NCBI GenBank assembly: GCA_002269645.1
Contig: NIVC01000266.1
Coordinates: 62,001-126,000 of the forward strand
DNA length: 64,000 nucleotides
Direction of reading: 5' to 3'
Source of the DNA: Macrostomum lignano
Taxonomy: Eukaryota
Below are positions 4,641 through 61,629 of the stretch, in pieces (the stretch's first letter is position 1; every line of letters starts with the position of its first letter). Made by a program: the position numbers and the translations under genes. The notes under the pieces are model-generated. The model searched no databases. It was not told where the DNA came from and was given only the letters and a program-made list of their open reading frames with translations.

Positions 4641-6195
4641 TCTTAAGAGCGTAGAACATCAATGTCTCCTCAAATTCCTCAATTATCCCCCATTCTCAAC
4701 GCGTTGTGCTGCACCTTCCCACTTTATAATGCATGCTGGCAGGCCTGTCATGCATCCGCCCCTCAGGTCGGGGGAGGGAGAATAATCCCCCTATCAATTT
4801 GATTGTGAAAGAATAATTTCCCAGGACTAGGCAGGACTAGGCATAAAAGTTATCCCAAAGAAGGCTGGGATAAAATCCCAAACAGATTGGTTGGAGGTAC
4901 TTGAGAACAGAAAAAACCCGTATGATAAAATATGGATCTCGTAAATTCGAAATTCACTCGCTAATTTTGTCCCCACCTATTCAGCAGCACTCAGAACCCC
5001 CTCACTGATGGAGGCGGTTCTGTCAGAGTTTTTTTTAATCAGCAAATTATCATCGATGACGCAATTTCTGACAAATTTTGTTGATTTTAGAAATCTATTT
5101 TTTACTGAATTCGTCACGAAATTTTCTATTAATTTAAAAAAAAACACCTTGGCAACCAGCAAAGTAGGAAATGAACAACTGAAATTGGCGGTCATGTGAC
5201 CTCACAAACAGCTCCCATATGGACACCTGGGAAGGTGAGATGACACGGGGACTGCCACCTCCCCTCTCTCAGTCTGTGTGTCTCAGAACCAGCTCCCCCA
5301 GTGCTAGGGGCAGCTGATTAGCGGCTCCTCATGTTTCCCTGTTGTCACGACCGACCGCTAAACTGAGATCCCATCGCGTGACAAAATGACTAAAAATTTT
5401 CGGGCGAAACAGATTGAAACCAAGACTTACACCTTTAATATAAAGAAGTCTTTGTTCGAAATTGGAGAGTTTCTTCCCTTTTAAAGATCTTCCTATGCTA
5501 ATGAGTCTTCACCGAAACCCCTCTTTGCCCTCGAGCCAGCACTCCTCTGAGAGATGAGACGACATGGGATATCGGATTTCAGACAGCGGATCTGTGCGGC
5601 CTCTCTCTGCTGTCAACGGCAGAGTCGTCTTCAGACGGGGGCTAAAAAAGCCGTCGTTGGCAAGTTCGAATTTGACTTGACCGAATATGACTGGCTAAAA
5701 GCATTTCTAAGTAGTCATCACTTCTCAGCACAACAAGAATGAATAAATCCAAGTCACTTCCGACTGAGTTGGGGGGGGGGGTTGAACCCCATTTGGATTG
5801 CGCAACCGTCAGTGCGCCCAGCCCCGTGTGTGCGGAACGTGTCGAGAGATGGACAGCTCGCACTGCAGGCAGATTGGCCTGTGGAATCCGAGCCGAGGTG
5901 GGAGGCGGCCGACGCCGACCTCAACTGGGATCTGGGACCCCCCGCCCGAAGGGGAAGGCGGGAGGTCCGCCCACCTTCCACAGCCGCCAGCCTCAAGGAG
6001 CTTCGGCCGAATCGCCCAGATCGGGTTGCAGCCCCGGGAGGCTCCCATTGGACAGCCGTCAAGCAGCCAATGACTGAGAGAAGGCAGACAGACAGAAGGA
6101 CCTAAAGAGACCAGCTAAATCTGAGGTGCGAACAGGAAAGACGCAGAAGGCCCAGTTTAATCCGCCCACACCCTGAGCTCCCCTTCACATTCGCA

Positions 6196-7251
6196 ATGAA
6201 CGAGGACAATGCAACTGCTTCCATCGCTTCGTCACCTCCGCAGCGAGTTGACGCCGAAGACGTTGAAGCCTCCGAGAAGCTGCTCTCGAATTGCCGCACC
6301 GCGGCGTCTCCCACCGGCTCATCGACCAGCTCTGGGAAGAACAATAACCATAGCAACGGCGTCGGAAATGGGAACGGAAAACTGCAAGTGGAGAGCGGCG
6401 GCGAGTCTACCGATGGCCGAAGGTCCTGTCCGGCCGCCTCGGCCGTTCTCGCCGTCCTGCTCTGCTGCTTCGTCGCCGGCTTCGGCGTCATGGCATTTCT
6501 CTACGTGCAGGCCGCCGCCGCGCCGGCCGGAGTTCCGCAGTCGTCGCCGCTGAGTCACGCCGCCGCGGCAGCCCTGCTGTCCTCGACATCCGCGTCGAAG
6601 TCCTGCGACGTTGAAGCCGACGGCTCCGAGCTGACTCGCCTGGCCGACTTCGGCGCCGATCCTTGCGGCAGTGGCAGCGGCAGCGGCGGCTTCGAGCAGT
6701 TCGCCTGCGGCGGCTACTCGAACTCGGCGACCCTGGGCTGGGGCGAGTCGGCCCGCTCGATGGCCGGAGATCGGAACCGGCGCGTGGCCGCGCTGCTGGA
6801 GGAGCGCCTGCTGTTTGGCGTCGATGCCGACCAGCCCGCCTGGCTGACGGCGCTGTCGAATTTCAGTCGAACCTGCGCCGCCGCCGGGGCCGCCTTTCCG
6901 CTGGAGTCGCTGAGGCGCGAGTTCGGCCGGCCGGCCGGTGGCCGGTTCGCCCCGATCAGCTTCTTCAGCCAGAGCTCCTTCACCTGGAACGACAGGTTCA
7001 CCTACGAGCAGGCTCTGGCGCAGCTGGCGGCGCACGGCGTGCCTGTTGCCATCGAGGTCGGCCTGCCGAACTCAACGTCGACCTGGCGAGGCTCCGTCGG
7101 TGACCAGCAGGGCGGCGGCCCGCTGCCGTGGATTCTGCGGCCGGCGGCTCCGCTGATCTCGCCGGATATTGATGTGGACAGCCTGGTGCAGCTGGTGAAG
7201 TCCGCGTTCAGCCTGATTGACAAGGGCATACCGCACCTGATTGCCACTCAG
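6196..7251 (+). CDS. Neprilysin/ECE (peptidase M13)-like type II membrane protein, exon 1
   Basis: Cytoplasmic N-terminus, a TM helix (AVLAVLLCCFVAGFGVMAFLYV), then the M13 N-terminal motif ADPC...FEQFACGGY. Donor CAG|GTGAG at 7251/7252, phase 0. Confidence 0.85.
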
Positions 7252-10765: not shown

Positions 10766-11062
10766 ATTCTTGACCTTAAAATTTGTCCGGTAAACCCGAA
10801 CCTCAGTCATTTTTGTAGTCAAATATCCCAAACAGGTGCGATAGCCAGGTGTTAATGCATTATTTACGATGCAAAAAACTGGATGAATTTCTGCCATATG
10901 GTGTGACCTGGCGGCTGTGGTGTCTACGAACTGGGGCATAAGCGGGTTTGCAGTTGTCAAACTTTGCTTAGAAGCTTATGGAAAATTTAAATAGATAGTG
11001 TAATGATGCCCTGGTGACCTTCTTATTCTGTAGATTGTACTTGCTACTGTGTCCCCAGTAGG

Positions 11063-11420
11063 ATTAGGGATTAGGGATCAGGGATCAGGGATCGGGGATC
11101 GGGGATTGGGGATCGGGGATGGAGGATTGGGGATCAGGGATTGGGGATCGGGGATCAGGGATCAGAGACCAGGGATCGGGGATCAGGGATCGAGGATCAG
11201 GGATCGGGGATCAGGGATCGGGGATCAGGGATCAGGGATCAGGGGTCGGGGATCAGGGATCAGGGATCGGGGATCGGGGATCGGGGATCTGGGATCGGGG
11301 ATCGGGGATCAGGGATCAGGGATCAGGGGTCGGGGATTAGGGATCAGGGATCAGGGATCAGGATCAGGGGTCGGGGATTAGGGATCAGGGATCAGGGGTC
11401 GGGGATTAGGGATCTGGGAT
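11063..11420. repeat. 7-bp repeat (GGGATCA/GGGATCG)n
   Basis: Direct tandem array. Confidence 0.92.
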
Positions 11421-11849
11421 CAGCAGGAGAAGCAGAGGGTAAGGATTCCACGGCTCTCCACTATTTGATCAAAGTGGTCGGTGGGGAGCAGAGATGCGAT
11501 AACAATCTAAGCGGGGGGAAGCCGGTGCAGATCCATTACAGCGGCAGCATTGTGTACTCAATATGTTTTGATTAGAACAAGTTGTTTAATAAGAGTCTCT
11601 TTTTGCAGAAGCAGCGGTACTGACTGAGGATTTGCTTGCTGTTGAAACCAGACGGGCAAACAGAGGACAGCTGGAGCAGAGCGTAGGGAGCTCCTGAAAT
11701 CCGATCTGATGCTCAGACAGACCGGCATTGCCGCTGACGCTAACCGGATTTTCTGATTTTTTTATGAAATTGTGACGTTTGGTGTTTTACATTCTCTTTG
11801 TTCTCCTGTGGAATGGGCTGTTGGCAGCAAGAGGAGAGCGAGAATGGCG

Positions 11850-12212
11850 AAAGTGGAGAGAGGGGAGGGAGGGGAGGGAGGGACAGAGGAAGGAAGAGAG
11901 GAAGAGATGAAGGGGGAGAGGGAGAGAGGAAGGGAGAGAGGAAAGGAGAGAGGGAGAAAGGAAGGGAGAGAGGAAAGGAGAGAGGGAGAGAGGAAAGGAG
12001 AGAGGGAGAGAGTGAGAGAGTTAGAGAGGAAGGGAGAGATGGAGAGAGAAAGGGAGAGAGGGAGAGAGAAAGGGAGAGAGGGAGAGAGAAAGGGAGAGAT
12101 GGAGAGAGAAAGGGAGAGAGGGAGAGAGAAAGGGAGAGTGGGAGAGAGAAAGGGAGAGAGGGAGAGAGAAAGGGAGAGAGTGAGAGAGGAAGGGAGAGTG
12201 GGAGAGAGGAAG
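11850..12212. repeat. GA-rich low-complexity tract (target of LINE insertion; continues at 20662-20720)
   Basis: Purine-rich tract flanking both ends of the LINE. Confidence 0.85.
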
Positions 12213-12500
12213 GCACGCGAAGGCGTATTCAGCATGCCAGTGAAGTATGAGACAGACTAGGCCTACGAGCTAAGGTCTGCGATGCTTCACGCCTGCCCCT
12301 ATCTTCAGCAGGTCAAGGCTGGTGGGAGGTCTGCACCCTCTATTTGCCTCTGGCAGCCGCAGACCCCCCCCCCACGCTGTCTCGCAAGTCGACCCAGGGG
12401 TACTCGTCCCCGCGTGTGTTCAAGGCAGACCCTAGGGCTGCTGGACAGACTGGGCTCCGGCGCTGGCGACCCTATCCAGTGGCTTCGGCCGAATTTGGGT
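12213..12500 (+). ncRNA. HDV-like self-cleaving ribozyme at the LINE 5' end
   Basis: P1 GCACGCG(12213-19):CGCGTGT(12411-17) with G1.U wobble; P2 ACCCAG(12392-97):TTGGGT(12495-500); P3 GGG(12398-400):CCC(12408-10); L3 TACTCGT; P1.1 AC(12402-03):GT(12418-19); J4/2 CGAAT with C at 12490; 172-nt J1/2. Folded by eye, not tested. Confidence 0.75.
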
Positions 12501-12705
12501 ATGCGGGTCTGGCTCGCCAGCCTGCAGGCCGTGGTACTGCTTAACGTACCCTCTAATGCCTAAGGTGTTTGACCGTGCCGATGGGCTGGAAGGCCGGGGA
12601 GTAGTCCGGTCGCTAGCGGTCCTTTTTTCAAACCGGCTGGCTTGAGGTGTCGGCCAGTCGGGTACTCAACTCGCATAACGAGTAGCCCTCCCCCGCTTTT
12701 CAGCT

Positions 12706-14229
12706 ATGGCCACTAACGCCACCATCTCTAAAGAAACTGACCCGGTCGCCTCTGGCCCACCGGGATCAGCCGCTCCGGTAGCTACCACTGGTAGCACCAA
12801 CGCCCAACTGGTCCAACCGGGCCAGCTGACGCTGCCGCGAGCACCCTGGCCGCCAGTCTAGCCGACCGCGCACGGCCGAGTCTCGACGACAGCGAAACAT
12901 CCGCCGCAACCGTAAGCGGCAGGAGAAGCGGGCTGCTACTGCGTCTGAGGAGGGCGGGCAAGCCACGGTGAGGCCTTCGGGAGCCACCGCAGCGGGGAGG
13001 CCTCTGGGGAGTCCGGTGGCGCGGCTGGGCCGTCAGGAACCGCCGTGTCCTCGGGCTCTCAGGGGGGCAACCCTGCCGGCCTACCGCCTTCCAAGGACAA
13101 AGCGGCCCCGCTCAAGACCTCCGAGTCCTACGCCTCCAAGGTCAAGCAGCCGCTGCAACCCGCCGTGATGATCCTCGGCGGGGATTTCGACCTGACGCCC
13201 GAGCAGCTCGACGTCGCGTGGCGTACCATCGACGAGGGCTTGCTCAATCTAACCCTGGAGGGCGTCTTCGTGGACATCGTCAAGTCCACCAAGGCGAACG
13301 GGTGCATCCTACTGTGGTGTAAATCCGAGGAAAGCACCCAGCTCCTGCGGGATCAGCTGCCAAGTTCGACTGGCCACAGCGACCTGGGCCAGCTGACCTT
13401 CGCCTTGGAGAGCGAGCGGCCGAAGACCATCCGCCATCGGATTTGGGTCCCGGCCGACAGTGCAATCAAGTCCGGGGAGCAGCTGCGGCAGCTCCTGCTC
13501 AAGCGGCACCCGGATCTCGACGCCAGTGTCTTGTGTACCACAGCACGGTCCGCAAGGGCACGACCGGGGCCACAGTCATCCTCGGCCTGACGGAGGGATG
13601 GGCCAAGCGGCTACCGCACGGCACAAACCTCCACCTTGGTCTCCATCAACTGACCATCCTCCGCTGTGAGGAGGGCAGGGTGGAGACCAAGAAAGACGGG
13701 AAGCGCGCCGCTCCCGGAGCTGGGGCTCATGCCCCGCCGGCCAAGCGGCAGCAGCAACCCGATCCCGAGCCTAACAAGGCTATTCGCGCTGCTGAGTCCG
13801 CCTCGCGCGGACGTAGACCCGCCCGCAGTAACCGGCGGTCCGGTCTAATCCAGCGCGCACTTGACGAAGCTCAGTCTCTGAGACTTCACCTCGAGCAGAC
13901 TCGTGTCGCTCGCAAAGACACTGAAAGCCAGCCGAGGGAACTGGACGACGGCACGGCTCAGCCTTCCAACTGGTGGGATTACCACCAGGAGGACGCTGCC
14001 GGCCGAGCTCAGACTCCCGACGGCGGGGCGCAAGGCGAAGGCAGCAGCCGTACCCAGTCGCTGGGAGGAGGAGGGCGGTGTAGCGCGGCTAGGTGACTCA
14101 CCTGCCGTGGGCGCCGTGTCCGCCTCCGCGGCGGCTGGGGAGGCGGCTGAGCCTGAGCCAATGGAAATTGGCGACTCAACTCTCACCGATGAGGCTGAGA
14201 ATGAGTTGCTTTTCTCCTCCCCTGGACAG
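12706..14229 (+). CDS. LINE ORF1 (DUF4780-like nucleic-acid-binding protein), several frameshifts
   Basis: Frame pieces (12968, 13045, 13443, 13903) join into a protein sharing YAxxV, LLxxxPDL and GxxxxW motifs with the 56370 ORF1. The natural stop TAG is displaced to 16843 by the LTR insertion. Confidence 0.7.
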
Positions 14230-14434
14230 TGTTGTGGGTGCGCGACCATACGTACTTAACTCTGTGTTCAGTTTGCGGCCCGTCGGGCACGTTGATTTGC
14301 GAAACGTGTTACGCAATAATCTAACATCCAATTTTTCTCACAGCGTGCATGTTAATATATAAATACAGACCGTGGTCCGGCGAGACTCACTAAGTTTTTT
14401 CTAGCAACCAAACCTACGCGTTCAATACACAACA
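14230..14434 (+). repeat. 5' LTR
   Basis: TGTTG...CAACA; contains TATAAATA; identical to the 3' LTR. Confidence 0.95.
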
Positions 14435-14446
14435 TTGGCGACGAAG

Positions 14447-16572
14447 ATGGCAGACCTCAGTCTCAACCCACCAACGCCGTACCTGGCTAGCCCGGGCGAG
14501 CCAAGCTGCCCGTGGCCAAGGTGGAAAAGTCAGTTCGCGATCTATTCAACAGCAACGGAACTGGACAAAATGTCGGAGGCGAGACAAATGGCCGTCCTTC
14601 GACACTGCCTCGGGCCGGAAGGCCAAAGGCAGGCGGAAAGCGTGGAGGCGAACGACATGAAGAAGCTGCTCGAAGAACTGGACAAAATTTTCGTGCGAAC
14701 AAGAGCGTCATCGGAGCTCGCTACAGGTTTCGGTGCAGGGAGCAGCGACCAGGGGAGCCGGTGCAGCAGTTCGTCAGAGATCTGCAGCAGCTCGCGGCCG
14801 ATTGCGCGTTCAAGGACCTGACGAAGGAAATGGTCCGCGATCAGCTTATCGAGAAAACGTGCATGCCACGTATCCGTGAGAGGCTGCTGATGGAACCAGA
14901 CGACCTGACACTGGAGAAGTCCCTGCAGCTCGCCAACCAAATCGAGACAGCCATCAACGAAGCCAAGGTCCTCAACGGCACATCAGGGGCGTCTCAAAAG
15001 ACAGTGCACGCCGTCTCAAAGCAGAAAGTCAGAGCCAAGCCCAAAACGCGCAAGGACAGCGAGAAGTGCAGGCGATGCGGCGGCGACTACAGCAAGGAGC
15101 ACAAGTGCCCAGCAATTGGAAAAAAGTGCAACAACTGCAATAAGCCGAACCACTTTGCCGCTGTATGCCGAAGCAACACGGTGGCGACTGTCGGTGAAGA
15201 GGTGAGCACCATTCTGCAAGTCGCGAACCAGGATTCGACTGCCGCCCACACCATCGAATGCGCGGTCCACGACGAGCTGCTGACGCTGACGCTGGACAGC
15301 GGTGCCTCCGTGTCGGTGATCAGCGCGTCCGACTTCCAGAGAGTTCGACGACACGCAACCAAGGGAAGCGGACCACCAGCACGGCTTGTGGCCTACGGAG
15401 GCTCGCACATTCGGACCTATGGGACAGCGACGCTCCCGGTCATGTACAAGGACAAGACGGCCTCGGTCTGTTTCCAGATCACAGAGGGCAGCTCAAGCCT
15501 TCTTGGGCGCTCCGACTTCTCGAAGTTTGGCGTGTCTCTTCAAATTAACCATCTCGGTGACGAGGGCTCACAACTTCAGGACAACTCCAAGGACTTCTTC
15601 GAGCCGATCAGGCAACAGCCGAGCACGCCAGCAGGAGCCTGGCAGGAGCTGCAGCTCGACATCTGCGGAGAGTTCAGAGCGGCGCCGCGTCACCAGCGAT
15701 TCGCGATCGTGCTCATCGATCAATTCAGCCGATGGCCAGAAGTCGCGCTCGTAGAATTGGTCACAACCAAGGTAGTCGTCGACTTCCTCGAGGTCATCTG
15801 GTCGAGGTGGGGCATCCCGAAGAGCATCACAACCGACAATGGACCCCAGTTCGGCCGAGAGTTCGACGAGTACCTTGCGAGCCTGGCGATCGAACACAAG
15901 CGAACGGCGGTGTACTGCCCAGAACAAAACGGCAACGTCGAACGGTTCAACCGCACTCTCGGCGAGGGCGTGACAGCGCACTTGGTCACCGGGTGGAGCT
16001 TCTGCAAGGCCGTCCGAGCTGTCGTCGCGGCCTATAGGGCGACCCCAACGCACGTCACGGGTTCGAGTCCACACGAGCTCATGACTGGCCGACCAATGCG
16101 CACCCCGCTGCTCGCACTCCAACCGGACTCGGAAGCCAAGCGGCCGACGTCGGCTCATGACCGGGTCGCCACGGCAAAGCAGCGAGCAAAGAGCGACACC
16201 GACCGTCGGCGGCATGCATCGGCGACGCGGACCGCGGTCATCCAAGACGGCTCCTGGGTGCACATCTCCAAGCCGGTGGCACCTGGCAAGCTGGAGCCGA
16301 AGCTCGCTGGGCCGTTCCGGGTTCGCAAGCGATTCAAGACAACTGTGCTGCTCGAAAACGGCAAGCGGTGGCACCTGCGGCGCTGCGTGCCGGCCGGACC
16401 TGGCAAAGGAAGCGACGACGACGGCGACGCGCAGCTCGACGAAGGTGGCGGCGGCCCGGAGCTGGATCCGCCACGACCGCCTGATGATCTCGCTGGGGAC
16501 CCGCCGGCACCCCCGCCGGTGCTGAGAAGGTCAGAGCGCGAGCGTCGCCCGCCAATGCGCTACCCGAACTGA
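14447..16572 (+). CDS. Gag-protease-integrase polyprotein (one frameshift near 14692)
   Basis: Gag (WPRWKSQF, RYRFRCREQ, MVRDQL), two Cys/His knuckle motifs, aspartic protease LDSGAS, then directly the integrase core (LDIC, TDNGPQF, NGNVERFNRTL). No YxDD or RNase H between them. Confidence 0.88.
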
Positions 16573-16632
16573 ACCGTCTATGATGCACTGAACTGACATG
16601 CGATTACTTAGGGGAATCTCATGTGGGGAGGA

Positions 16633-16837
16633 TGTTGTGGGTGCGCGACCATACGTACTTAACTCTGTGTTCAGTTTGCGGCCCGTCGGGCACGTTGATT
16701 TGCGAAACGTGTTACGCAATAATCTAACATCCAATTTTTCTCACAGCGTGCATGTTAATATATAAATACAGACCGTGGTCCGGCGAGACTCACTAAGTTT
16801 TTTCTAGCAACCAAACCTACGCGTTCAATACACAACA
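16633..16837 (+). repeat. 3' LTR
   Basis: Identical copy of 14230-14434, followed by TSD GACAG. Confidence 0.95.
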
Positions 16838-16847
16838 GACAGTAGAC

Positions 16848-19800
16848 ATGACTGTCTCCCAGGGCATCCATTGCTTGCAGGTCAACCTGCAGCACAGCAT
16901 TGCTGCTTCAGTCAACCTCTTGAAGCACACTGACCAATACGCGCCAGGGATTATCCTTATCCAGGAACCTTGGACGCTTAGGGGCAGGCCCCAACATGTC
17001 CCCACCGGCTACCAGTGTTTAACCGCTGGTACCCGGGAGGGAAACCTGGCACCAAGATCCTGCATCATGGTGTCCAGTTCTATTAACGCATGGCTCAGAT
17101 CAGACCTGTCCACCAGGGACATCTGTGTCATCCAGTCTGAAGACATACTCCCTGGGAGGACTACCCTCATCGCCTCGGTTTACCTACCGGGCGACGGCGA
17201 GATGATCCCAGTAGAGCTTTCACACTGGTCGAGCTCTGCTCCACCAGAAACTATGAGCTGCTCGTGGCAGGTGACATCAATGCCCACCACACCCACTGGG
17301 GCAGTTCTGATATAAACCAGAGAGGTGAAGACTTCCTGGCTTATATTGCTACTACAACCCTTGAGTTCTGTAACTCGGGTAGTACCCCTACCTTCAATAA
17401 CGGACGCCGATCGGAGGTGCTGGATGCCACCCTCGCCACGCCCAGGCTCTTCCGGAGCACTAGGGAGTGGCGGGTGCTTCCTGAGGCGTCCCTCTCCGAT
17501 CACAAGTTCATCTCTTTCACGCTGGCCAGCGCCCGTAACGCAGGCCAGCTTTACTGGAAACGAAATGCTAGGAATACTGACTGGACCGCCTTCAGGCTTG
17601 CCCTGGAGGAGACCTATCGTTGCACTAGCACTCCAGTCTCCATCAACACCTGCGAAGAAGCAGACGAATTTGCGGCCGCACTTACGGACTCGCTCACTGC
17701 TGCCTTCGAAGCCTCATGCCCACTAAAGGCATACAAAGGCAAACAGTCGGCCCCATGGTGGAACCCGCAGCTTGGCGACCTCCGTCGCAGAGCCAAAAGG
17801 CTTCACCGCAGGGCCCAAAAAACTAAAAACCCGGCCGACCAAACCGCCTACCTGAACTCTATCCACGAGTTCAAGAGGCAGGTTAGGAACGCCAAAACCA
17901 ACAAGTGGCGCGAATACTGTGAGGAACTTGAGGGCTCCCGCCCCACCTCCAGAATCGTTAAAGCCTTCACCCTGGACAAAATGTCCAAACTCTCCTCAGT
18001 CAAGAGAGCCGACGGCTCGCTCACTGAGAACCCAGGAGAAACACTGGAAGCGATGCTAACAGCGTTTTTCCCGAACGAGCCAGCCAGGCCGGACCCCCCT
18101 GATCACTCAGTGGGCGGACACGTACTGGCTGACTCAATCATCACGGAGGACCGCGTTACTAAAGCTGTCTCCTCCTTCAAACCCTTCAAATCCCCAGGAC
18201 CGGACGGCGTTGTGCCAGCCTTCCTGCGGGAGGCGGTGAAATGCACCGGTTTCCTGCGGAACCTTTGCCGGCTTCTGAAAGCTTGCATTGTTCTCGGCTT
18301 TGTTCCGAAACCCTGGACCGAGGCCAAGGTGGTCTTTATCCCCAAGCCTGGCCGACCGGACTACCGGTCCATTAAATCCTTCAGACCAATTAGCCTCACC
18401 TCCTCATTGGTGAAGCTGTTAGAGAGACTGGTGCTCTGGCGCCTCCTCTCTGTGGAACTGAAGAACAAGCCGCTCAGTGAGAACCAGCATGCCTTTCGGG
18501 CAGGCAGGTCCACGGAGAGCGCGCTTCACGTTCTGGTTGACATGCTGGAGAAAGCCGTTCTTGGTAATGGCTACGCTCTCGCTGTCTTCCTCGACATTGT
18601 TGGAGCCTTTGATAATGTCCTCTTTGAGGCTTTTGACAGAGCTCTACGTGCTAGAGGAACCCACTCGCACCTCACCCGGTGGATCATGTATATGATCAGC
18701 CACCGTACTGCCACCGCACACCTGTTGGGCCACCAACGGACGGTAACCGTCTGCAAAGGCAGCCCCCAGGGCGGTGTCCTCTCTCCAGTTCTCTGGAACA
18801 TGGTCATCGATGAGCTCCTCCAGGACAGCCATCTTGACCCCATCCTCAAGGTCGGTTACGCCGATGATGTCACAGCCGTGGCATCCGGACCGTCACCTGA
18901 AACCCTTAGAGATCTTTTGCAAAACTTCATTCGCTCTGCTGAACGTTGGGCGGACAGGTGCGGCCTCAGGCTCTCCGAGACCAAAACTGTCGCGATCATG
19001 TTCACCAGCAGGGTAAACTGGCGTATTCGCCCACTAAAGCTTTACGGGGTGGAAATTCCATCCTGCAAGCAAACCAAGTGTCTCGGCGTTACGCTGGACC
19101 ACCGGCTGAGCTGGTCCACCCACGTCCAGGCCAAAACCAAAAAAGCCCTCGCGATTCTTGCGCAGCTGCGCAGAGCCGTCGGCACCACCTGGGGCCTCAC
19201 CCCAAAGCGGCTCTGGTGGATCTATACCGCAATGGTCCGACCGGCCGTTACTTACGCCGGCCTGGTCTGGACCAGCGCCTTGCAGATTAAAACCTGCCAC
19301 GAAGCCCTCAAAAAGGTGCAGGGACGTGCGTGCCGCATGATCCTGAATGCCCCGCTCTCTGCTCCCTTTGACGGCCTCAACGCCTTTCTTTGCCTCCCGC
19401 CTCTGGACATCTTTGTCCGTCGCGAGGCTGCTAAAACCACCCGCCGGCTCATCGAGGCTGGCGCTAGCTTCAAGCCACAAAGAGCGATGGCGAAGCGCAA
19501 GCTCCTGCCGCACTCTGACCTGTGCCTTAAAGTTCTGGAGGAGAGTGGGAGTGCGGCTGTCCTTTCGGACGCTGAACCGCGCTCCCTCAATCTCTACCAA
19601 CGCTTCAAGGTCACTATCCCCTCCAGGGAGAACGCCAACGACAGCTGGGCCCCTCAGGAGGTTCACTGCTTCACTGACGGATCCTCCAAAGACGGTTTAT
19701 CCGGCTTTGGAGTCTGCATCCTTATCAACGGCCGCGTGATTGCTACTCACGCCCAACACACTGGCAGACTCTCCAGCGTCTTCCAGAATGAAGTCCTTGC

Positions 19801-20551
19801 CATCAGCTCCTGTGCAGCTGAGCTCCACTGCAAGGACTTCAAGGACAGAAGAATCTTCTTCCACTCTGACAGCCAGGCCGCTTTACAGGCCCTGTGTCAC
19901 ACCACTACGAACTCCCGAACAGTCCGCGACTGTATCGGGCAGCTCAACAAGCTGGCTCGGAGGAACACCGTCCGGCTCACGTGGATCCCAGGACACGCCG
20001 GCTTCAAAGGTAACGAGCTCGCCGACTCCCTTGCTAAGGCGGGCTGTTCCGGCTCGCCCCTTGGCCCCGTGCCCCTGGCCCCCATCCCCGCCACAGTCAT
20101 TAATCGTCAGATTAACGACTGGGCGGACATCCTGCACTTGCGCAGATGGGATGGCATCTCCAACTGCCGCCAATCTCGTGCGGCAGTGCCCAATCCGTCC
20201 CTCAAGCTGCGGAGAATCCTTTTGAATCAAAATCGAAAAGATATCCGCGCTCTCACTATGACCTTCACAGGTCACGGTTGCTTTGCCAGGCACTGCTTCC
20301 TCCGATGTATTCGCCGGAGTGAACTCTGCCCTTTCTGCAACCTCGAGAACGAAGACGCCAAGCACTTCGTCTGCTACTGCCCGGCCTTCAACCGAGACCG
20401 GCTCAACCACCTCGGGCCCAACCCGTCCCTGGACGACGTTTGCCGGCCCGAGAACATCCCACGGCTCATCCGGTTCCTCCGGGCCACCAAGCGAGCCTCC
20501 GTCTTCCCCACCGAAGACAACGCTGCAGACAGGACCGGCAGACCTCCCTGA
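16848..20551 (+). CDS. LINE ORF2: AP endonuclease - reverse transcriptase - RNase H - CCHC (frameshift near 17222)
   Basis: APE (QVNLQH, IQEPW, GDINAHH, SDH), RT (SPGPDG, FRPISL, PQGGVLSP, YADD), RNase H (CFTDGS, SDSQAAL, GHAG..GNELAD), C-terminal CPFC...H...C. Confidence 0.93.
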
Positions 20552-20903
20552 CCGGCCCCGCGCCCTAGCCTTTGCGGGTCTTTCAGGGATTAGCGGAATG
20601 GGCGACGCTCGCCTCCCCGCTGCGTCTTCGGACCGCCCTGCAGCTAAGTCAAGTAAGTCAAGGGAGAGAGGAAGAGAGAGAGGAAGAGAGAGTGGGAGAG
20701 AGGAAGGGAGAGAGGGAGAGACAATGAAAAGCAGGGCACATCGGTAGCATCATCGCACAAAATCTCAATTACAGTAAGCAAGTCAACAGAACAATACACA
20801 TGTATTTGAAAAAAATTCAAAGTAAAACTGTAAAAAGGTCATCAGGAACTTTCACTACAGCAGCCAATATCGCACACGCATCCAGTGAATGCTAAATGTT
20901 GAT

Positions 20904-21419: not shown

Positions 21420-21920
21420 CTTCTGGGATATTAATTCCTGAGACTGTAAGGTGTCATTTGGGATAAACTTCCCATCAGTGTCATTGGGATAAAGTTCCCC
21501 TTTTAGTATCAATTGGCATAAAATTTTCCCTTAGTGTCGTTTGGGATAAAATTCCCCATTAGCATCGTTTGGGATAAAAATTCCCTTTAGTGTTATTTGG
21601 GATCAAATTCCCCATTAGTGTTATTTGGGATCAAATTCCCCATTAGTGTCATTTGGGATCAAATTCCCCATTAGTGTCATTTGGGATCAAATTCCCCATT
21701 AGTGTCATTTGGGATCAAATTCCCCATTAGTGTCATTTGGGATCAAATTACACATTAGTGTCTTTTATGATAAAATTTTCCATTGGTGTCATTTGAATAA
21801 AATCCCCCCTTTAGAGTCATTCGGGATAAAATTACCCATTAGTATCATTTGGGAAAAATTTCCCCGTTAGCATCGTTTGGGATAAAATTCCCATGAGTAT
21901 CATTTGGAATAAACTTCTTC
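21420..21920. repeat. Intronic ~28-bp minisatellite (GGGATCAAATTCCCCATTAGTGTCATTT)
   Basis: Tandem array, degenerate at its edges, in ROCO intron 4. Confidence 0.88.
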
Positions 21921-21988
21921 ATTTGTGTTATTGCGGATAAAACTCCCCAACCGCCAAAATGGGGATAAATCTCCATAACGCCGCCCAC

Positions 21989-23167
21989 CTGAGGCGGCAT
22001 GGTGCAGCAGGCGAGCTCCAGCAGCTCCAGGCAGTGCAGCGCCTCGACCAGCGCCTGCCGCTGACCACCACGGCCGAAGGCGAGGCAGCGCACCAGCGGC
22101 CAGGACAGCTGGCCGCGGCTCAAGGCCGCCTCGCGAGCCTCCTCGTACTCGGCGGCGGACATCCGGCCGCAGGCGCGGAACAGGGCGTTCTCGTTGTAGT
22201 CGACAAGAAAGTCGGCCAGGCTGACCGGCAGCAGGCGGCCGAGAAAGTCGGCCAGCTTGTCCAGCCGGTGGAGCACGAAGTTCCTCAGGCGGCGGTGCCG
22301 CCGCAGCCACAGCAGCTGGCCGCTCTCGTGGTAGAACTCCAGACAGTCGATCAGCTGAGCATCCCGGATGTTCCGCTGGTCGGCGAACTCGACCAACCAA
22401 TCCCATTCGATGTAAAGCCCGTCCTGCTGCTTCACCTGCTCCATGAAAGGCTGCCAGTTGGTGGGCACGTACTTCTGCAGGTGCGGCATGGCCTCCCTGT
22501 TGGTGCTCAGCCGCTCCAGATCGTCACGAAGTGTCAGAAGGTCCGGCTGAGCCGGCGGGCCCACCGCCGACACCAGGTGGATCCGGGGCTGAAGCCGCAG
22601 CTCGGGATTCGAGTCCGCTCGAAGCTGCTCGAGGCACCGCGCCAGATCCTCGTCCAGGCTGTCCCGAAGGCGCTGCACCGCGGCCTCGGCCGTCGACTCC
22701 GCAGCCAGAGCCGCCTCGACTTCGGAGACTTCGGCCAGAATCTCGTCCGCGGAGGTCTCCGTTGTCATGGAGATGGTATCCAACTTAGTGCCGATCAGTT
22801 GCACCCGAGCTCCGGGCAGGTGGGCGGCCAGCAGCCGCAGCCACCGGCTGACCACATCGAACCCGAGCTGCTGATACTCGGCGATGTCGAAGACAACGCA
22901 GTGAAGCGCCTTCGGGTCCAGCAGCTTCGCCAGCAGAGGCGCGTAGATCGGGTGACCGCCGGCCTCCAGCAGCACGAACGGGCAGCGGTTCTCGGAGCGC
23001 CAGGAGCTCAGCTGGAAGCCGCGGGTCAGCCCTGACCCGTCCGACTTTGTCGGTGCCGCGTGTCCGAGACGGAGAAGGCGGGCCAGGGAGGTCTTGCCGC
23101 TGCCCAAGTCACCAAGGAACACCAGCTTGCAGGGGCGAAGCTTTGGGGCGTTCTGGATAGCCATGCG
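21989..23167 (-). CDS. ROCO exon 4: ROC GTPase plus COR domain
   Basis: P-loop GDLGSGKT, G3-like LEAGG, G4 GTKLD, G5 VSA, then COR-like W/YHESGQLLW. Acceptor CCGCAG|CGC and donor CAG|GTGGGC; 1179 nt, phase 0/0. Confidence 0.9.
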
Positions 23168-55730: not shown

Positions 55731-56231
55731 CCGCGACGTCGGCCGAGGAGGGAAAACAGTGGTGAGGAGAATCGCGGTTGTGACGATAAGAAAATTCCAA
55801 AAATCTTAAGTGCGCAGGAGGGGGGCAAACGGCAACTTAAACCGAGGGACTCTGTGACATCCGCCAGCTTTTCGTTTTTCGAGGAGGCTCTTCCCCCTCC
55901 TTTTCGTTCTGGCCTGGCGTGGAAGCGGCTAGCTTCCTCGTCTTGGTCTGCTGGTGGGGGACGGATCCCCCCTGCTGCTTTTTTGCGGGGCAGGTGGCTG
56001 CTAAGTAGTTGGCTGCTGGCTAAGCGCCAACTACCCATCGACAGCCCTTAGTTGCAACTGGTACCACACGGGTTCTCGAGGGCCGCTCTTGTGGGGGAGG
56101 GCTCGGGCGTCGGCTGTCAACTCGACCTGGCGCCTGTGTCCCAAGCCCGCAGCCGGCCTCCCGCCCCCTGATCTTGCAGAGTGTGGACCGGGGGCCTGCC
56201 GGAGCCTCGCCTGGGAGCAATCCTGGGATAA

Positions 56232-61107
<4,876 letters not shown>

Positions 61108-61629
61108 TCCTTGTGCTCTTTTACCTTGGGGTTGCGATAGGGGCCTCGCGGCCTATTCGCGGCGCCTGCGCCCCCCGTCAGTAGTAAGTAAGTAAGTGCG
61201 CAGGAAATGATTGCTGCTAGCCGCAGGTCAGCTGTGGTGACAGTTGCAGCCACTAGAGCGATGTCTGTGGTCGAAATCGATCGATTGCACGAACTTTTGG
61301 GATGCCCCTCGTACAAGTAGGTCTGGACTGGCCATCATACACGGAATATGTGTTCGTGTGCGCTTTTGCCAGCATAAATTTGTTGCCACGAGGCTGGCTT
61401 ATACGCGGCCTCGTAAATGCATCCAACGATCTTATCGAAGTTTTCCACTCTAAGCGAATTCAGGATGCCGACTTTACAGTCGGGCAGGTTAATAGCATTA
61501 GCCAAGATATGCGAGCTGTTAATTGCGAGAGTGCCGCTGACAGCGGGACAGGAAAAGTGAATATCACTGTAGTGCGGTGGAGTGGTTGGAGATAAAACTG
61601 AGTTACAATGCTAGTTAGGCCTGACCAAG

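What the first reader, a model, noticed from the sequence alone, without database searches (positions are those of the whole stretch)
12213..12500. HDV-like self-cleaving ribozyme fold starting exactly at the first base of a LOA-like LINE
Seen in the sequence: all elements of the nested double pseudoknot occur in the right order. P1 is GCACGCG:CGCGTGT with the canonical G1.U wobble; P2 is ACCCAG:TTGGGT; P3 is GGG:CCC closing a 7-nt L3 (UACUCGU); J4/2 is CGAA(U) with the candidate catalytic C at 12490. P1.1 shows a compensatory A-U pair (AC:GU instead of CC:GG). G1 (12213) is the base immediately after the independently derived 13-bp TSD, across a 172-nt J1/2 insert. Established: HDV-like ribozymes define the 5' ends of R2, RTE, L1Tc and some LOA/R1-type elements, and R2 versions can have long J1/2 inserts. 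Inference: this family frees its RNA from host read-through transcripts by self-cleavage. Weak points: J4/2 has one extra U, the multibranched P4 lacks an obvious closing stem, and C12490 could pair in an adjacent C-UUCG-G hairpin.
Basis: partly seen in the sequence, partly recalled or inferred. Interest (0 to 1): 0.85.

Follow-up and report, generated by a model that had tools for sequence, protein, structure and literature searches.

The report
HDV-like ribozyme heading a flatworm LINE

Summary
My own descriptor finds this site as the only plus-strand hit in 64 kb. Shuffled windows give 0.37 hits on both strands, and 0 of 3000 shuffles of the 5' UTR start at base 1. The 13-bp target-site duplication is real: it breaks the 13+7 phase of the host minisatellite.

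The ORF2 matches a Macrostomum lignano protein at 99% identity. One related LINE with DNA was available (L001, ORF2 62% identical). Its contig begins exactly at the equivalent G and has the same fold. Across 16 core pairs, 10 are unchanged, 1 changed on one side, 5 are compensatory (two of them in P1.1) and none is broken. The 172-nt J1/2 insert is a conserved, closed three-hairpin domain.

The conserved partner is CUGGG at 12450-12454, after a compact P4. That puts the likely catalytic C at 12446, three bases before P2 as in HDV.

Rfam models find nothing, and cleavage itself is untested. HDV-like ribozymes at LINE 5' ends are already known (R2, R4, RTE, baggins, L1Tc), so this is a new member of a known kind.

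The parts
12200..12212 (.). 5' copy of the 13-bp target-site duplication GGGAGAGAGGAAG
   Evidence: The duplicated 13-mer breaks the 13+7 phase of the 20-bp minisatellite.
12213..20661 (+). Whole LINE: 5' UTR, frameshifted ORF1, nested LTR element, ORF2 (APE-RT-RNase H), and a 3' tail ending CUAAGUCAAGUAAGUCAA
   Evidence: ORF2 is 99% identical to a Macrostomum lignano protein. L001 ends with the same GCAGCUAAGUCAA.
12213..12219 (+). P1 5' strand GCACGCG. The predicted cleavage site is immediately 5' of G12213.
   Evidence: It aligns with L001 bases 1-6, GCCUGC, which are the first bases of that contig.
12220..12391 (+). J1/2 peripheral domain: a closing stem plus three hairpins
   Evidence: The same architecture is predicted independently in the window and in L001. 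Seven compensatory pairs in the pairwise consensus. Sequence-conserved block GUAUGAGA...GCUAAGGUCUNCGAUGC.
12393..12397 (+).
12398..12410 (+). P3 (GGG/CCC) closing L3 UACUCGU. U12401 and G12406 sit at the positions of HDV U20 and G25.
   Evidence: L001 has GGG-UCUCCGU-CCC.
12411..12417 (+). P1 3' strand CGCGUGU
12418..12423 (+). J1/4: G12418 and U12419 pair with C12403 and A12402 (P1.1), followed by UCAA
   Evidence: both P1.1 pairs are compensatory against L001 (AC:GU versus CU:AG). L001 has GCAA after P1.1.
12424..12442 (+). Compact P4 hairpin GGCAG-A-CC-CUAG-GG-CUGCU
   Evidence: L001 has a very stable P4 hairpin at the same place (z = -5.2).
12443..12449 (+). J4/2 GGACAGA. C12446 is the favoured catalytic cytosine.
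   Evidence: Aligns with L001 GCUGC (C228). In both, the C lies three bases before P2.
12450..12454 (+). Favoured P2 3' strand CUGGG
   Evidence: MAFFT aligns it with L001 CUGAG. One compensatory pair, C-G to U-A. Duplex energy -6.7 kcal/mol.
12490..12500 (+).
   Evidence: Present in the window but with no counterpart in L001. C12490 can pair in a GGC-UUCG-GCC hairpin.
12706..14229 (+). ORF1, starting at ATG 12706 and broken by several frameshifts and stops
14230..16837 (+). Nested LTR retrotransposon remnant: two identical 205-bp LTRs, an integrase ORF, and a 5-bp duplication GACAG. It is not part of the ribozyme.
16850..20551 (+). ORF2: AP endonuclease, reverse transcriptase and RNase H, with one frameshift near 17200
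20662..20674 (.). 3' copy of the target-site duplication

Best explanation
Bases 12213 to about 12454 are the DNA copy of an HDV-like self-cleaving ribozyme. It forms the 5' end of an APE/RT/RNase H LINE family of Macrostomum lignano.

Mechanism (inferred): when the element is transcribed as part of a longer host or read-through transcript, the RNA folds into a nested double pseudoknot.
- P1: 12213-19 with 12411-17.
- P2: 12393-97 with 12450-54.
- P3: 12398-400 with 12408-10.
- P1.1: 12402-03 with 12418-19.
- P4: 12424-42.

The 172-nt J1/2 domain is closed by its own stem and holds P1 and P2 together. A cytosine in J4/2, most likely C12446, then catalyses cleavage just 5' of G12213. The element's RNA therefore starts at its own first base, and full-length retrotransposed copies begin at that G next to the target-site duplication.

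Shown here: the fold, its position at the element's first base, and its conservation with covariation in one relative. Inferred: catalysis, the identity of the catalytic C, and the biological role. This particular copy is dead, with a frameshifted ORF1 and a nested LTR insertion. The claim is about the family. The core of this copy looks intact.
For: - Fold and chance: all helices are present in the right order, and this is the only plus-strand hit of the descriptor in 64 kb. Shuffled windows give 0.37 hits, and none of 3000 5'-UTR shuffles starts at base 1.
- Position: G12213 directly follows a target-site duplication that breaks the phase of the host minisatellite.
- Relative L001 (ORF2 62% identical): the contig starts exactly at the homologous G and carries the same fold. 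Only 2 of 2000 shuffles give a hit at base 1.
- Covariation across 16 core pairs: 10 unchanged, 1 one-sided, 5 compensatory (2 in P1, 2 in P1.1, 1 in P2), 0 broken.
- L3 keeps U at position 1 and CG at positions 5-6 in both sequences.
- The J1/2 domain folds the same way in both sequences, with 7 compensatory pairs.
- Energetics: the constrained nested fold plus P2 is about as stable as the unconstrained minimum.
  - Window: -86.5 and -6.7 against -95.1 kcal/mol.
  - L001: -122.3 and -6.5 against -128 kcal/mol.
- L001's unconstrained minimum already contains P1 and P4.
- Literature: 5'-terminal HDV-like ribozymes are established in R2, R4, Dong, RTE, baggins and L1Tc (PMC3774820, PMC6765202). 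J1/2 inserts range from 23 to over 700 nt (PMC3774820). Structured J1/2 domains accelerate cleavage (PMC4908430).
Against: - There is no cleavage data.
- No Rfam family matches, even at E<=10 or E<=1 in the relatives. A 172-nt insert and two pseudoknots would be expected to defeat those models.
- Only one informative relative could be obtained, so covariation rests on two sequences.
- J4/2 (GGACAGA; GCUGC in L001) is not the canonical CGAA, and L001 has no adenines after the C.
- L001 has G1-C rather than the usual G.U wobble.
- In L001 the J4/2 bases can instead extend P4.
- The window's unconstrained minimum-energy fold does not contain P1.
- More distant relatives (35-39% ORF2 identity) and the second LINE in the window show no convincing HDV-type P3/L3.
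- My descriptor was designed after seeing the candidate.
Confidence: 0.68

Rival explanations
1. It is an HDV-like ribozyme folded exactly. P2 is ACCCAG 12392-97 with UUGGGU 12495-12500. P4 is a 70-nt multibranched region (12420-12489). J4/2 is CGAA(U), with C12490 as the catalytic base.
For: - The pairing exists and passes the strict descriptor.
- CGAA is the canonical J4/2 of genomic HDV (my own knowledge, not tested here).
- The duplex energy is -6.8 kcal/mol, equal to the alternative.
Against: - It is not conserved. L001 has no complement of its P2 5' strand anywhere downstream of position 238.
- The homologous L001 stretch reads CUAAACCGGGU.
- The proposed P4 folds no better than shuffled sequence (z = +0.32) and has no closing stem.
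- C12490 can pair in a UUCG hairpin.
- The C sits four bases before P2, not three.
- During transcription the 12450-54 strand appears 45 nt earlier and would pair first (inference).
Confidence: 0.12
2. It is a conserved but non-catalytic 5' UTR structure. The long-range helix, hairpins and pseudoknot would serve another role, such as binding the element's proteins, ribosome entry, or an internal promoter read at the DNA level. The 5' end would then be set by transcription initiation at G1.
For: - The J1/2 domain is conserved in sequence as well as structure, more than a mere spacer needs.
- More distant relatives begin with a long-range helix but lack an HDV-type P3/L3. Examples are L004 bases 1-11 with 151-161, and L248 about 744-750 with 888-894.
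- J4/2 is non-canonical and no Rfam family matches.
- In L1Tc the same 77 nt act both as promoter and as ribozyme (PMC3383444), so promoter function at a LINE 5' end has precedent.
Against: - This reading does not explain the features specific to the HDV active site.
- One such feature is a 3-bp P3 directly abutting the P1 3' strand.
- Another is a 7-nt L3 that keeps U...CG.
- A third is a two-pair P1.1 maintained by double compensatory change.
- A fourth is a pseudoknotted P2 with a C three bases upstream.
- All four are kept between two elements whose ORF2s are only 62% identical.
Confidence: 0.15
3. It is a chance match of a permissive motif in GC-rich sequence.
For: The descriptor gives about 0.37 hits per shuffled 64-kb window on both strands, and one unrelated minus-strand hit occurs in the real window.
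Against: - The hit starts at the exact first base of the element (0 of 3000 shuffles).
- It recurs at the homologous position in L001 (2 of 2000 shuffles).
- It has five compensatory pairs and none broken.
Confidence: 0.04

Closest known systems
[quoted passage not shown]
   Same: - Nested double-pseudoknot topology.
- The cleavage site coincides with the element's first base, next to the target-site duplication.
- P1 of 6-7 bp, P2 of at least 5 bp, P3 of 3 bp and a variable P4.
- Few conserved bases apart from L3 and one C.
- Presumed role: freeing the element's RNA from a co-transcript.
   Different: - The host is a free-living flatworm, Macrostomum. I found no paper on ribozymes in this genus.
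- J4/2 is GGACAGA or GCUGC rather than CGAA-like.
- No Rfam model recognises it.
- Activity is untested.
Large HDV-like ribozymes with structured J1/2 domains: drz-Agam-2-1, and silkmoth and honeybee R2 (PMC4908430, PMC3774820)
   Same: A long insert (172 nt here) between P1 and P2. It closes on itself with a stem, the arrangement shown to bring P1 and P2 together and speed cleavage.
   Different: Here the insert is conserved in sequence and in three-hairpin architecture between elements only 62% identical in ORF2. Silkmoth R2 J1/2 loops share only small regions of identity (PMC3774820).
Genomic HDV ribozyme and the CPEB3 ribozyme
   Same: - L3 pattern U-N-N-U/C-C-G-N.
- A G.U wobble at the base of P1 in the window copy.
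- A two-pair P1.1.
- A (G/U)CAA stretch after P1.1.
- A C three bases before P2.

The comparison with the HDV sequence is from my own knowledge, not a tool result.
   Different: - P1.1 is AC:GU or CU:AG instead of CC:GG.
- A very large J1/2.
- No CGAA in the favoured J4/2.
- No detectable match to the Rfam models.
Twister-variant ribozymes of Schistosoma mansoni LINEs (PMC8501958)
   Same: They are self-cleaving RNAs linked to non-LTR retrotransposition in a flatworm.
   Different: A different ribozyme class and fold. No twister or other Rfam ribozyme matches here.

Membership tests
HDV-like self-cleaving ribozymes | Nested double pseudoknot with strand order P1-(J1/2)-P2-P3-L3-P3'-P1'-(J1/4)-P4-(J4/2)-P2' | tested here: met
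   Descriptor hit at 12213. The same order occurs in L001.
HDV-like self-cleaving ribozymes | P1 of 6-7 bp starting at the cleavage site, usually with G1.U at its base, and its 3' strand directly following P3' | tested here: met
   The window has 7 bp with G12213.U12417. L001 has 6 bp with G1-C194, so it lacks the wobble.
HDV-like self-cleaving ribozymes | 3-bp P3 closing a 7-8-nt L3 that carries the conserved U, C and G | tested here: met
   GGG-UACUCGU-CCC in the window and GGG-UCUCCGU-CCC in L001. PMC3774820 names the conserved C and G of L3.
HDV-like self-cleaving ribozymes | P1.1: two pairs between L3 positions 2-3 and the first two bases after P1' | tested here: met
   AC:GU in the window and CU:AG in L001. 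Both pairs are compensatory.
HDV-like self-cleaving ribozymes | Pseudoknotted P2 of at least 5 bp | tested here: met
CCCAG:CUGGG in the window and CUCAG(A):(U)CUGAG in L001, with one compensatory pair.
HDV-like self-cleaving ribozymes | Catalytic cytosine in J4/2, typically followed by purines/adenines that dock in P3 | tested here: inconclusive
   A C lies three bases before P2 in both sequences (C12446, C228). The following bases are AGA in the window and UGC in L001. Which C acts, if any, cannot be decided in silico.
HDV-like self-cleaving ribozymes | Helices supported by covariation across relatives | tested here: met
   5 compensatory, 1 one-sided and 0 broken among 16 core pairs, plus 7 compensatory pairs in J1/2. 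This rests on only two sequences.
HDV-like self-cleaving ribozymes | Match to curated covariance models (the Rfam HDV, CPEB3 and drz families) | tested here: not met
   No hit at gathering score, at E<=10 on 12150-12750, or at E<=1 on L001 and other relatives. This is expected with a 172-nt J1/2 insert and unmodelled pseudoknots, so it is a weak negative.
HDV-like self-cleaving ribozymes | Mg2+-dependent site-specific self-cleavage giving a 5'-OH on G1 | not testable with these tools
   Needs an in vitro transcription and cleavage assay.
5'-terminal ribozymes of non-LTR retrotransposons | G1 is the first base of the element (full-length copies end there, next to the target-site duplication) | tested here: met
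   Duplication at 12200-12212 and 20662-20674. The L001 contig starts at the homologous G. Only two copies were examined.
   Pfam hits Exo_endo_phos_2, RVT_1 and RNase_H in that order. The order is also found in other clades, so it is not diagnostic.
   No clade reference sequences were available in the tools. Database relatives are unnamed.

The most novel reading that the evidence does not exclude
The conserved ~165-172-nt J1/2 domain may be more than a clamp. It could be a second functional module, for example an internal promoter or a binding site for the element's own proteins.

Together with the four related segments X-X'-X-X', it could switch the RNA between a cleaving fold and a non-cleaving fold. 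The segments are the 5' end, bases 10-15, the 3' end of J1/2, and the P1 3' strand. That would make this a regulated HDV-like ribozyme particular to a flatworm LINE lineage.
Probability: 0.1. Interest if true: 0.55.

Novelty: new member of a known kind. Interest (0 to 1): 0.33.

Why it matters
- If active, it would extend 5'-terminal HDV-like ribozymes to an APE-type LINE of a free-living flatworm. Schistosome LINEs were reported to use twister variants instead.
- It would give Macrostomum lignano, a transgenic model worm, a native self-cleaving RNA.
- It would add a case where the large J1/2 domain is itself conserved, which is useful for studying how peripheral domains tune this ribozyme.
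- For genome annotation, it gives a precise marker for full-length 5' ends of this LINE family.
- It does not change the general picture, which has been established since 2009-2013.

Tried and rejected
- Rfam at gathering score, at E<=10 on the region, and at E<=1 on six relatives: no relevant hit.
- Self-BLAST of the LINE against the window: no second copy, only a 120-bp match at 73% to a different LINE. The scratch query file was deleted afterwards.
- Homologue search with L001's ORF1: only itself and one M. lignano protein without DNA.
- Second ORF2 search with P0001: no further close relatives with DNA.
- The DNA of P0002's contig (58% identity) was not retrievable.
- L002 and L003 lack the 5' UTR.
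- I scanned the metagenome and genome collections for the conserved 16-base motif GCTAAGGTCTNCGATGC. This was a mistake.
  - The motif is too short for collections of that size, and the hits look like chance matches. The named genome hits are bacterial or archaeal.
  - Only one hit has even a loose match to the second motif nearby, and it is not related.
- Four more distant LINEs (L004, L245-L248) and the window's second LINE: no convincing HDV-type P3/L3. The second LINE's G-run start gives only low-specificity matches.
- RNAalifold on the pairwise MAFFT alignment does not recover the pseudoknotted fold and pairs the 5' end locally instead.
- Ruminski et al. 2011 and Webb & Luptak 2011 are not held in the paper library.

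Full report
**What is at the site**

The window looks eukaryotic. An ORF at 17264-20551 carries AP-endonuclease, reverse-transcriptase and RNase H domains in that order. It is 99% identical to part of a Macrostomum lignano gene model (P0003), so the window is very probably from that flatworm.

The LINE runs from 12213 to 20661.
- Its 3' end is CUGCAGCUAAGUCAAGUAAGUCAA.
- ORF1 starts at ATG 12706 and is broken by frameshifts.
- A 2.6-kb LTR-retrotransposon remnant sits inside it at 14230-16837. It has identical 205-bp LTRs, an integrase ORF and a 5-bp duplication GACAG.

This copy is therefore dead.

**The 5' boundary**

The element lies in a GA-rich minisatellite with a 20-bp period. By eye the unit is a 13-mer plus a 7-mer. 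GGGAGAGAGGAAG occurs immediately before 12213 and immediately after 20661. On the two sides of the LINE the array reads [13]-LINE-[13]-[7]. That breaks the phase, as a true 13-bp target-site duplication should. The first base that is not G or A is C12214. G12213 is assigned to the element because the downstream copy continues with A, and because the relative described below begins with the same GC.

**Checking the observation**

I wrote a descriptor requiring the following:
- a 7-bp P1 starting with G;
- a 6-bp P2;
- a 3-bp P3;
- a 7-8-nt L3;
- a Watson-Crick P1.1;
- a C in J4/2;
- J1/2 up to 250 nt and P4 up to 120 nt.

Results:
- It finds this site as the only plus-strand hit in 64 kb, plus one unrelated minus-strand hit inside ORF2.
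- Shuffled windows give 0.37 hits on both strands.
- Of 3000 shuffles of the 5' UTR, 8 gave any hit and none a hit at base 1.

The descriptor was fitted after the fact. The agreement with the independently defined first base is the strong part.

Rfam finds nothing, either at gathering score or at E<=10 on the region.

**Comparative evidence**

The protein database held few close relatives. One came with usable DNA: L001, a 6492-bp contig from sequencing run ERR14788467, with ORF2 62% identical.

- Its 3' end has the same GCAGCUAAGUCAA and is followed by about 530 bases of unrelated sequence.
- At the 5' side the contig stops exactly at GCCUGC, the counterpart of GCACGC.
- From that first base it has the same fold.
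  - P1: GCCUGC with GCAGGC.
  - P2: CUCAGA with UCUGAG.
  - P3 and L3: GGG-UCUCCGU-CCC.
  - J1/4: AG.
- Only 2 of 2000 shuffles of its 5' UTR give a hit at base 1, even with a looser descriptor.

Pair by pair, across 16 core pairs:

| Outcome | Pairs |
|---|---|
| Unchanged | 10 |
| Changed on one side (G.U to G-C) | 1 |
| Compensatory | 5 (2 in P1, both P1.1 pairs, 1 in P2) |
| Broken | 0 |

L3 keeps U at position 1 and CG at positions 5-6 in both sequences.

**The 3' half needs redrawing**

The window offers two partners for the P2 5' strand.
- The alternative: CUGGG at 12450-12454, preceded by ACAGA.

MAFFT aligns the second with L001's P2 3' strand, and the pair C12394-G12453 becomes U171-A236. 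The distance from P1' to P2' is then about the same in both sequences (32 nt in the window, 37 in L001). P4 becomes a compact hairpin, 12424-12442 in the window and a very stable 201-226 in L001 (z = -5.2). A cytosine lies exactly three bases before P2 in both (C12446, C228), as C75 does in HDV (my knowledge).

- It has no counterpart in L001. No complement of CUCAG exists downstream of 238.
- It needs a 70-nt P4 that folds no better than shuffled sequence.
- It puts the C four bases from P2.
- C12490 can pair in a GGC-UUCG-GCC hairpin.

Its one advantage is the canonical CGAA. I favour 12450-12454 and C12446 at roughly 3 to 1, given that the RNA is a ribozyme at all.

**The J1/2 insert**

Folded alone, 12220-12391 and L001 7-170 give the same architecture: a closing stem and three hairpins. 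The pairwise consensus has 7 compensatory pairs. One hairpin is also conserved in sequence (GUAUGAGA...GCUAAGGUCUNCGAUGC).

The literature supports this arrangement.
- R2 ribozymes have J1/2 of 23 to over 700 nt, and in silkmoth part of it is required for cleavage (PMC3774820).
- Structured J1/2 domains act as a 'pinch' that brings P1 and P2 together and raises the rate by nearly three orders of magnitude (PMC4908430).

**Energetics**

| Sequence | Constrained nested fold (P1, P3, free P2 strands) | P2 duplex | Unconstrained minimum |
|---|---|---|---|
| Window | -86.5 kcal/mol | -6.7 | -95.1 |
| L001 | -122.3 kcal/mol | -6.5 | -128 |

With P2 and P1.1 added, the ribozyme fold is competitive. 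L001's unconstrained minimum already contains P1 and P4. The window's does not contain P1.

**Limits**

- There is no biochemical evidence.
- Covariation rests on two sequences.
- J4/2 is non-canonical, and L001 has no adenines after the C.
- L001 lacks the G.U wobble.
- In L001 the J4/2 bases can extend P4 instead.
- More distant LINEs (35-39% ORF2 identity; L004, L245-L248) and the second LINE in this window (55820-61197) show no convincing HDV-type P3/L3. L004 and L248 do begin with a long-range helix.
- 'LOA-like' could not be tested.

**Comparison with what is known**

HDV-like ribozymes that define the 5' end of non-LTR retrotransposons are established for R2, R4/Dong, RTE, baggins and L1Tc (PMC3774820, PMC6765202, PMC3185411). 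A planarian R2 is among the predicted cases (PMC3774820). For Schistosoma mansoni LINEs, twister variants were reported instead (PMC8501958). I found no paper linking Macrostomum to ribozymes.

This is therefore a new member of a known kind. It has a redrawn 3' half and an unusually well-conserved J1/2 domain. It is not a new mechanism.

**Verdict**

- Probability that the family encodes an active HDV-like ribozyme: about 0.7 to 0.8.
- Interest is modest.

Noticed in passing
window 14225-16842: An LTR-retrotransposon remnant is nested inside the LINE. It has two 100% identical 205-bp LTRs (14230-14434 and 16633-16837) with TG...CA ends, a 5-bp duplication GACAG, and an ORF with an integrase core domain. 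The only Pfam hits in its long ORF are integrase, so it looks internally deleted but recently inserted.
   Followed up: partly
window 55808-61205: A second, different LINE (ORF1 56370-57293; ORF2 with APE, RT and RNase H). It has a duplication GCGCAGGA (55812-55819 and 61198-61205) and a (TAAG)n-like tail. It starts with GGGGGGC at 55820. That G-run can pair with several C/U-rich stretches, but no convincing HDV-type fold was found.
   Followed up: partly
window 12213-12226, 12381-12385, 12412-12417; L001 1-15, 157-162, 189-194: Four related segments lie in the order X-X'-X-X': the 5' end, bases 10-15, the 3' end of J1/2, and the P1 3' strand. They allow two exclusive folds. One is P1 plus the J1/2 closing stem. 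The other is a local 5' hairpin plus a short hairpin around P3. The same C-to-U and G-to-A differences occur in all four segments between the window and L001. The alternative fold is weak in the window (4 + 3 bp).
   Followed up: partly
L004 1-161; L248 about 744-894: Two distant LINE relatives (35-39% ORF2 identity) begin with a G-started long-range helix to a site 135-150 nt downstream, followed in L004 by a clean hairpin. The helices are GUGGGCCCGUC with GACGGGCCCAC in L004, and GGGGUGC with GCACCCU in L248. Neither has an HDV-type P3/L3. They could be variant or unrelated 5' structures.
   Followed up: partly
L245 about 66-88; L247 about 262-284: Two distant LINE 5' UTRs share a hairpin with a conserved 12-nt loop and a covarying stem: UCCGC-AGGUGGCGGAUA-GCGGA and UCCCC-AGGUGGCGGAUC-GGGGA. 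Function unknown, and no Rfam match.
   Followed up: no
window 11061-11423, 11855-12213 with 20661-20721, and 21451-21949: Three tandem arrays flank the LINE: (GGATCAG)x52, the 20-bp GA-rich minisatellite that the LINE split, and a 28-bp repeat x18 (GTGTCATTTGGGATAAAATTCCCCATTA).
   Followed up: no
window 21845-23164 (minus strand): A 439-aa ORF with weak, sub-threshold similarity to Ras/Roc small-GTPase domains. It may be a host gene exon just downstream of the LINE.
   Followed up: no
L001 1 and 5949-6492: The L001 contig ends exactly at the predicted ribozyme G1 but reads about 530 bases past the element's 3' end. A repeat-boundary break in a DNA assembly would be expected at the 3' end too. 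This asymmetry is what a 5'-cleaved, 3'-read-through transcript would give, if the run is RNA-seq. The run's type and species could not be checked.
   Followed up: no
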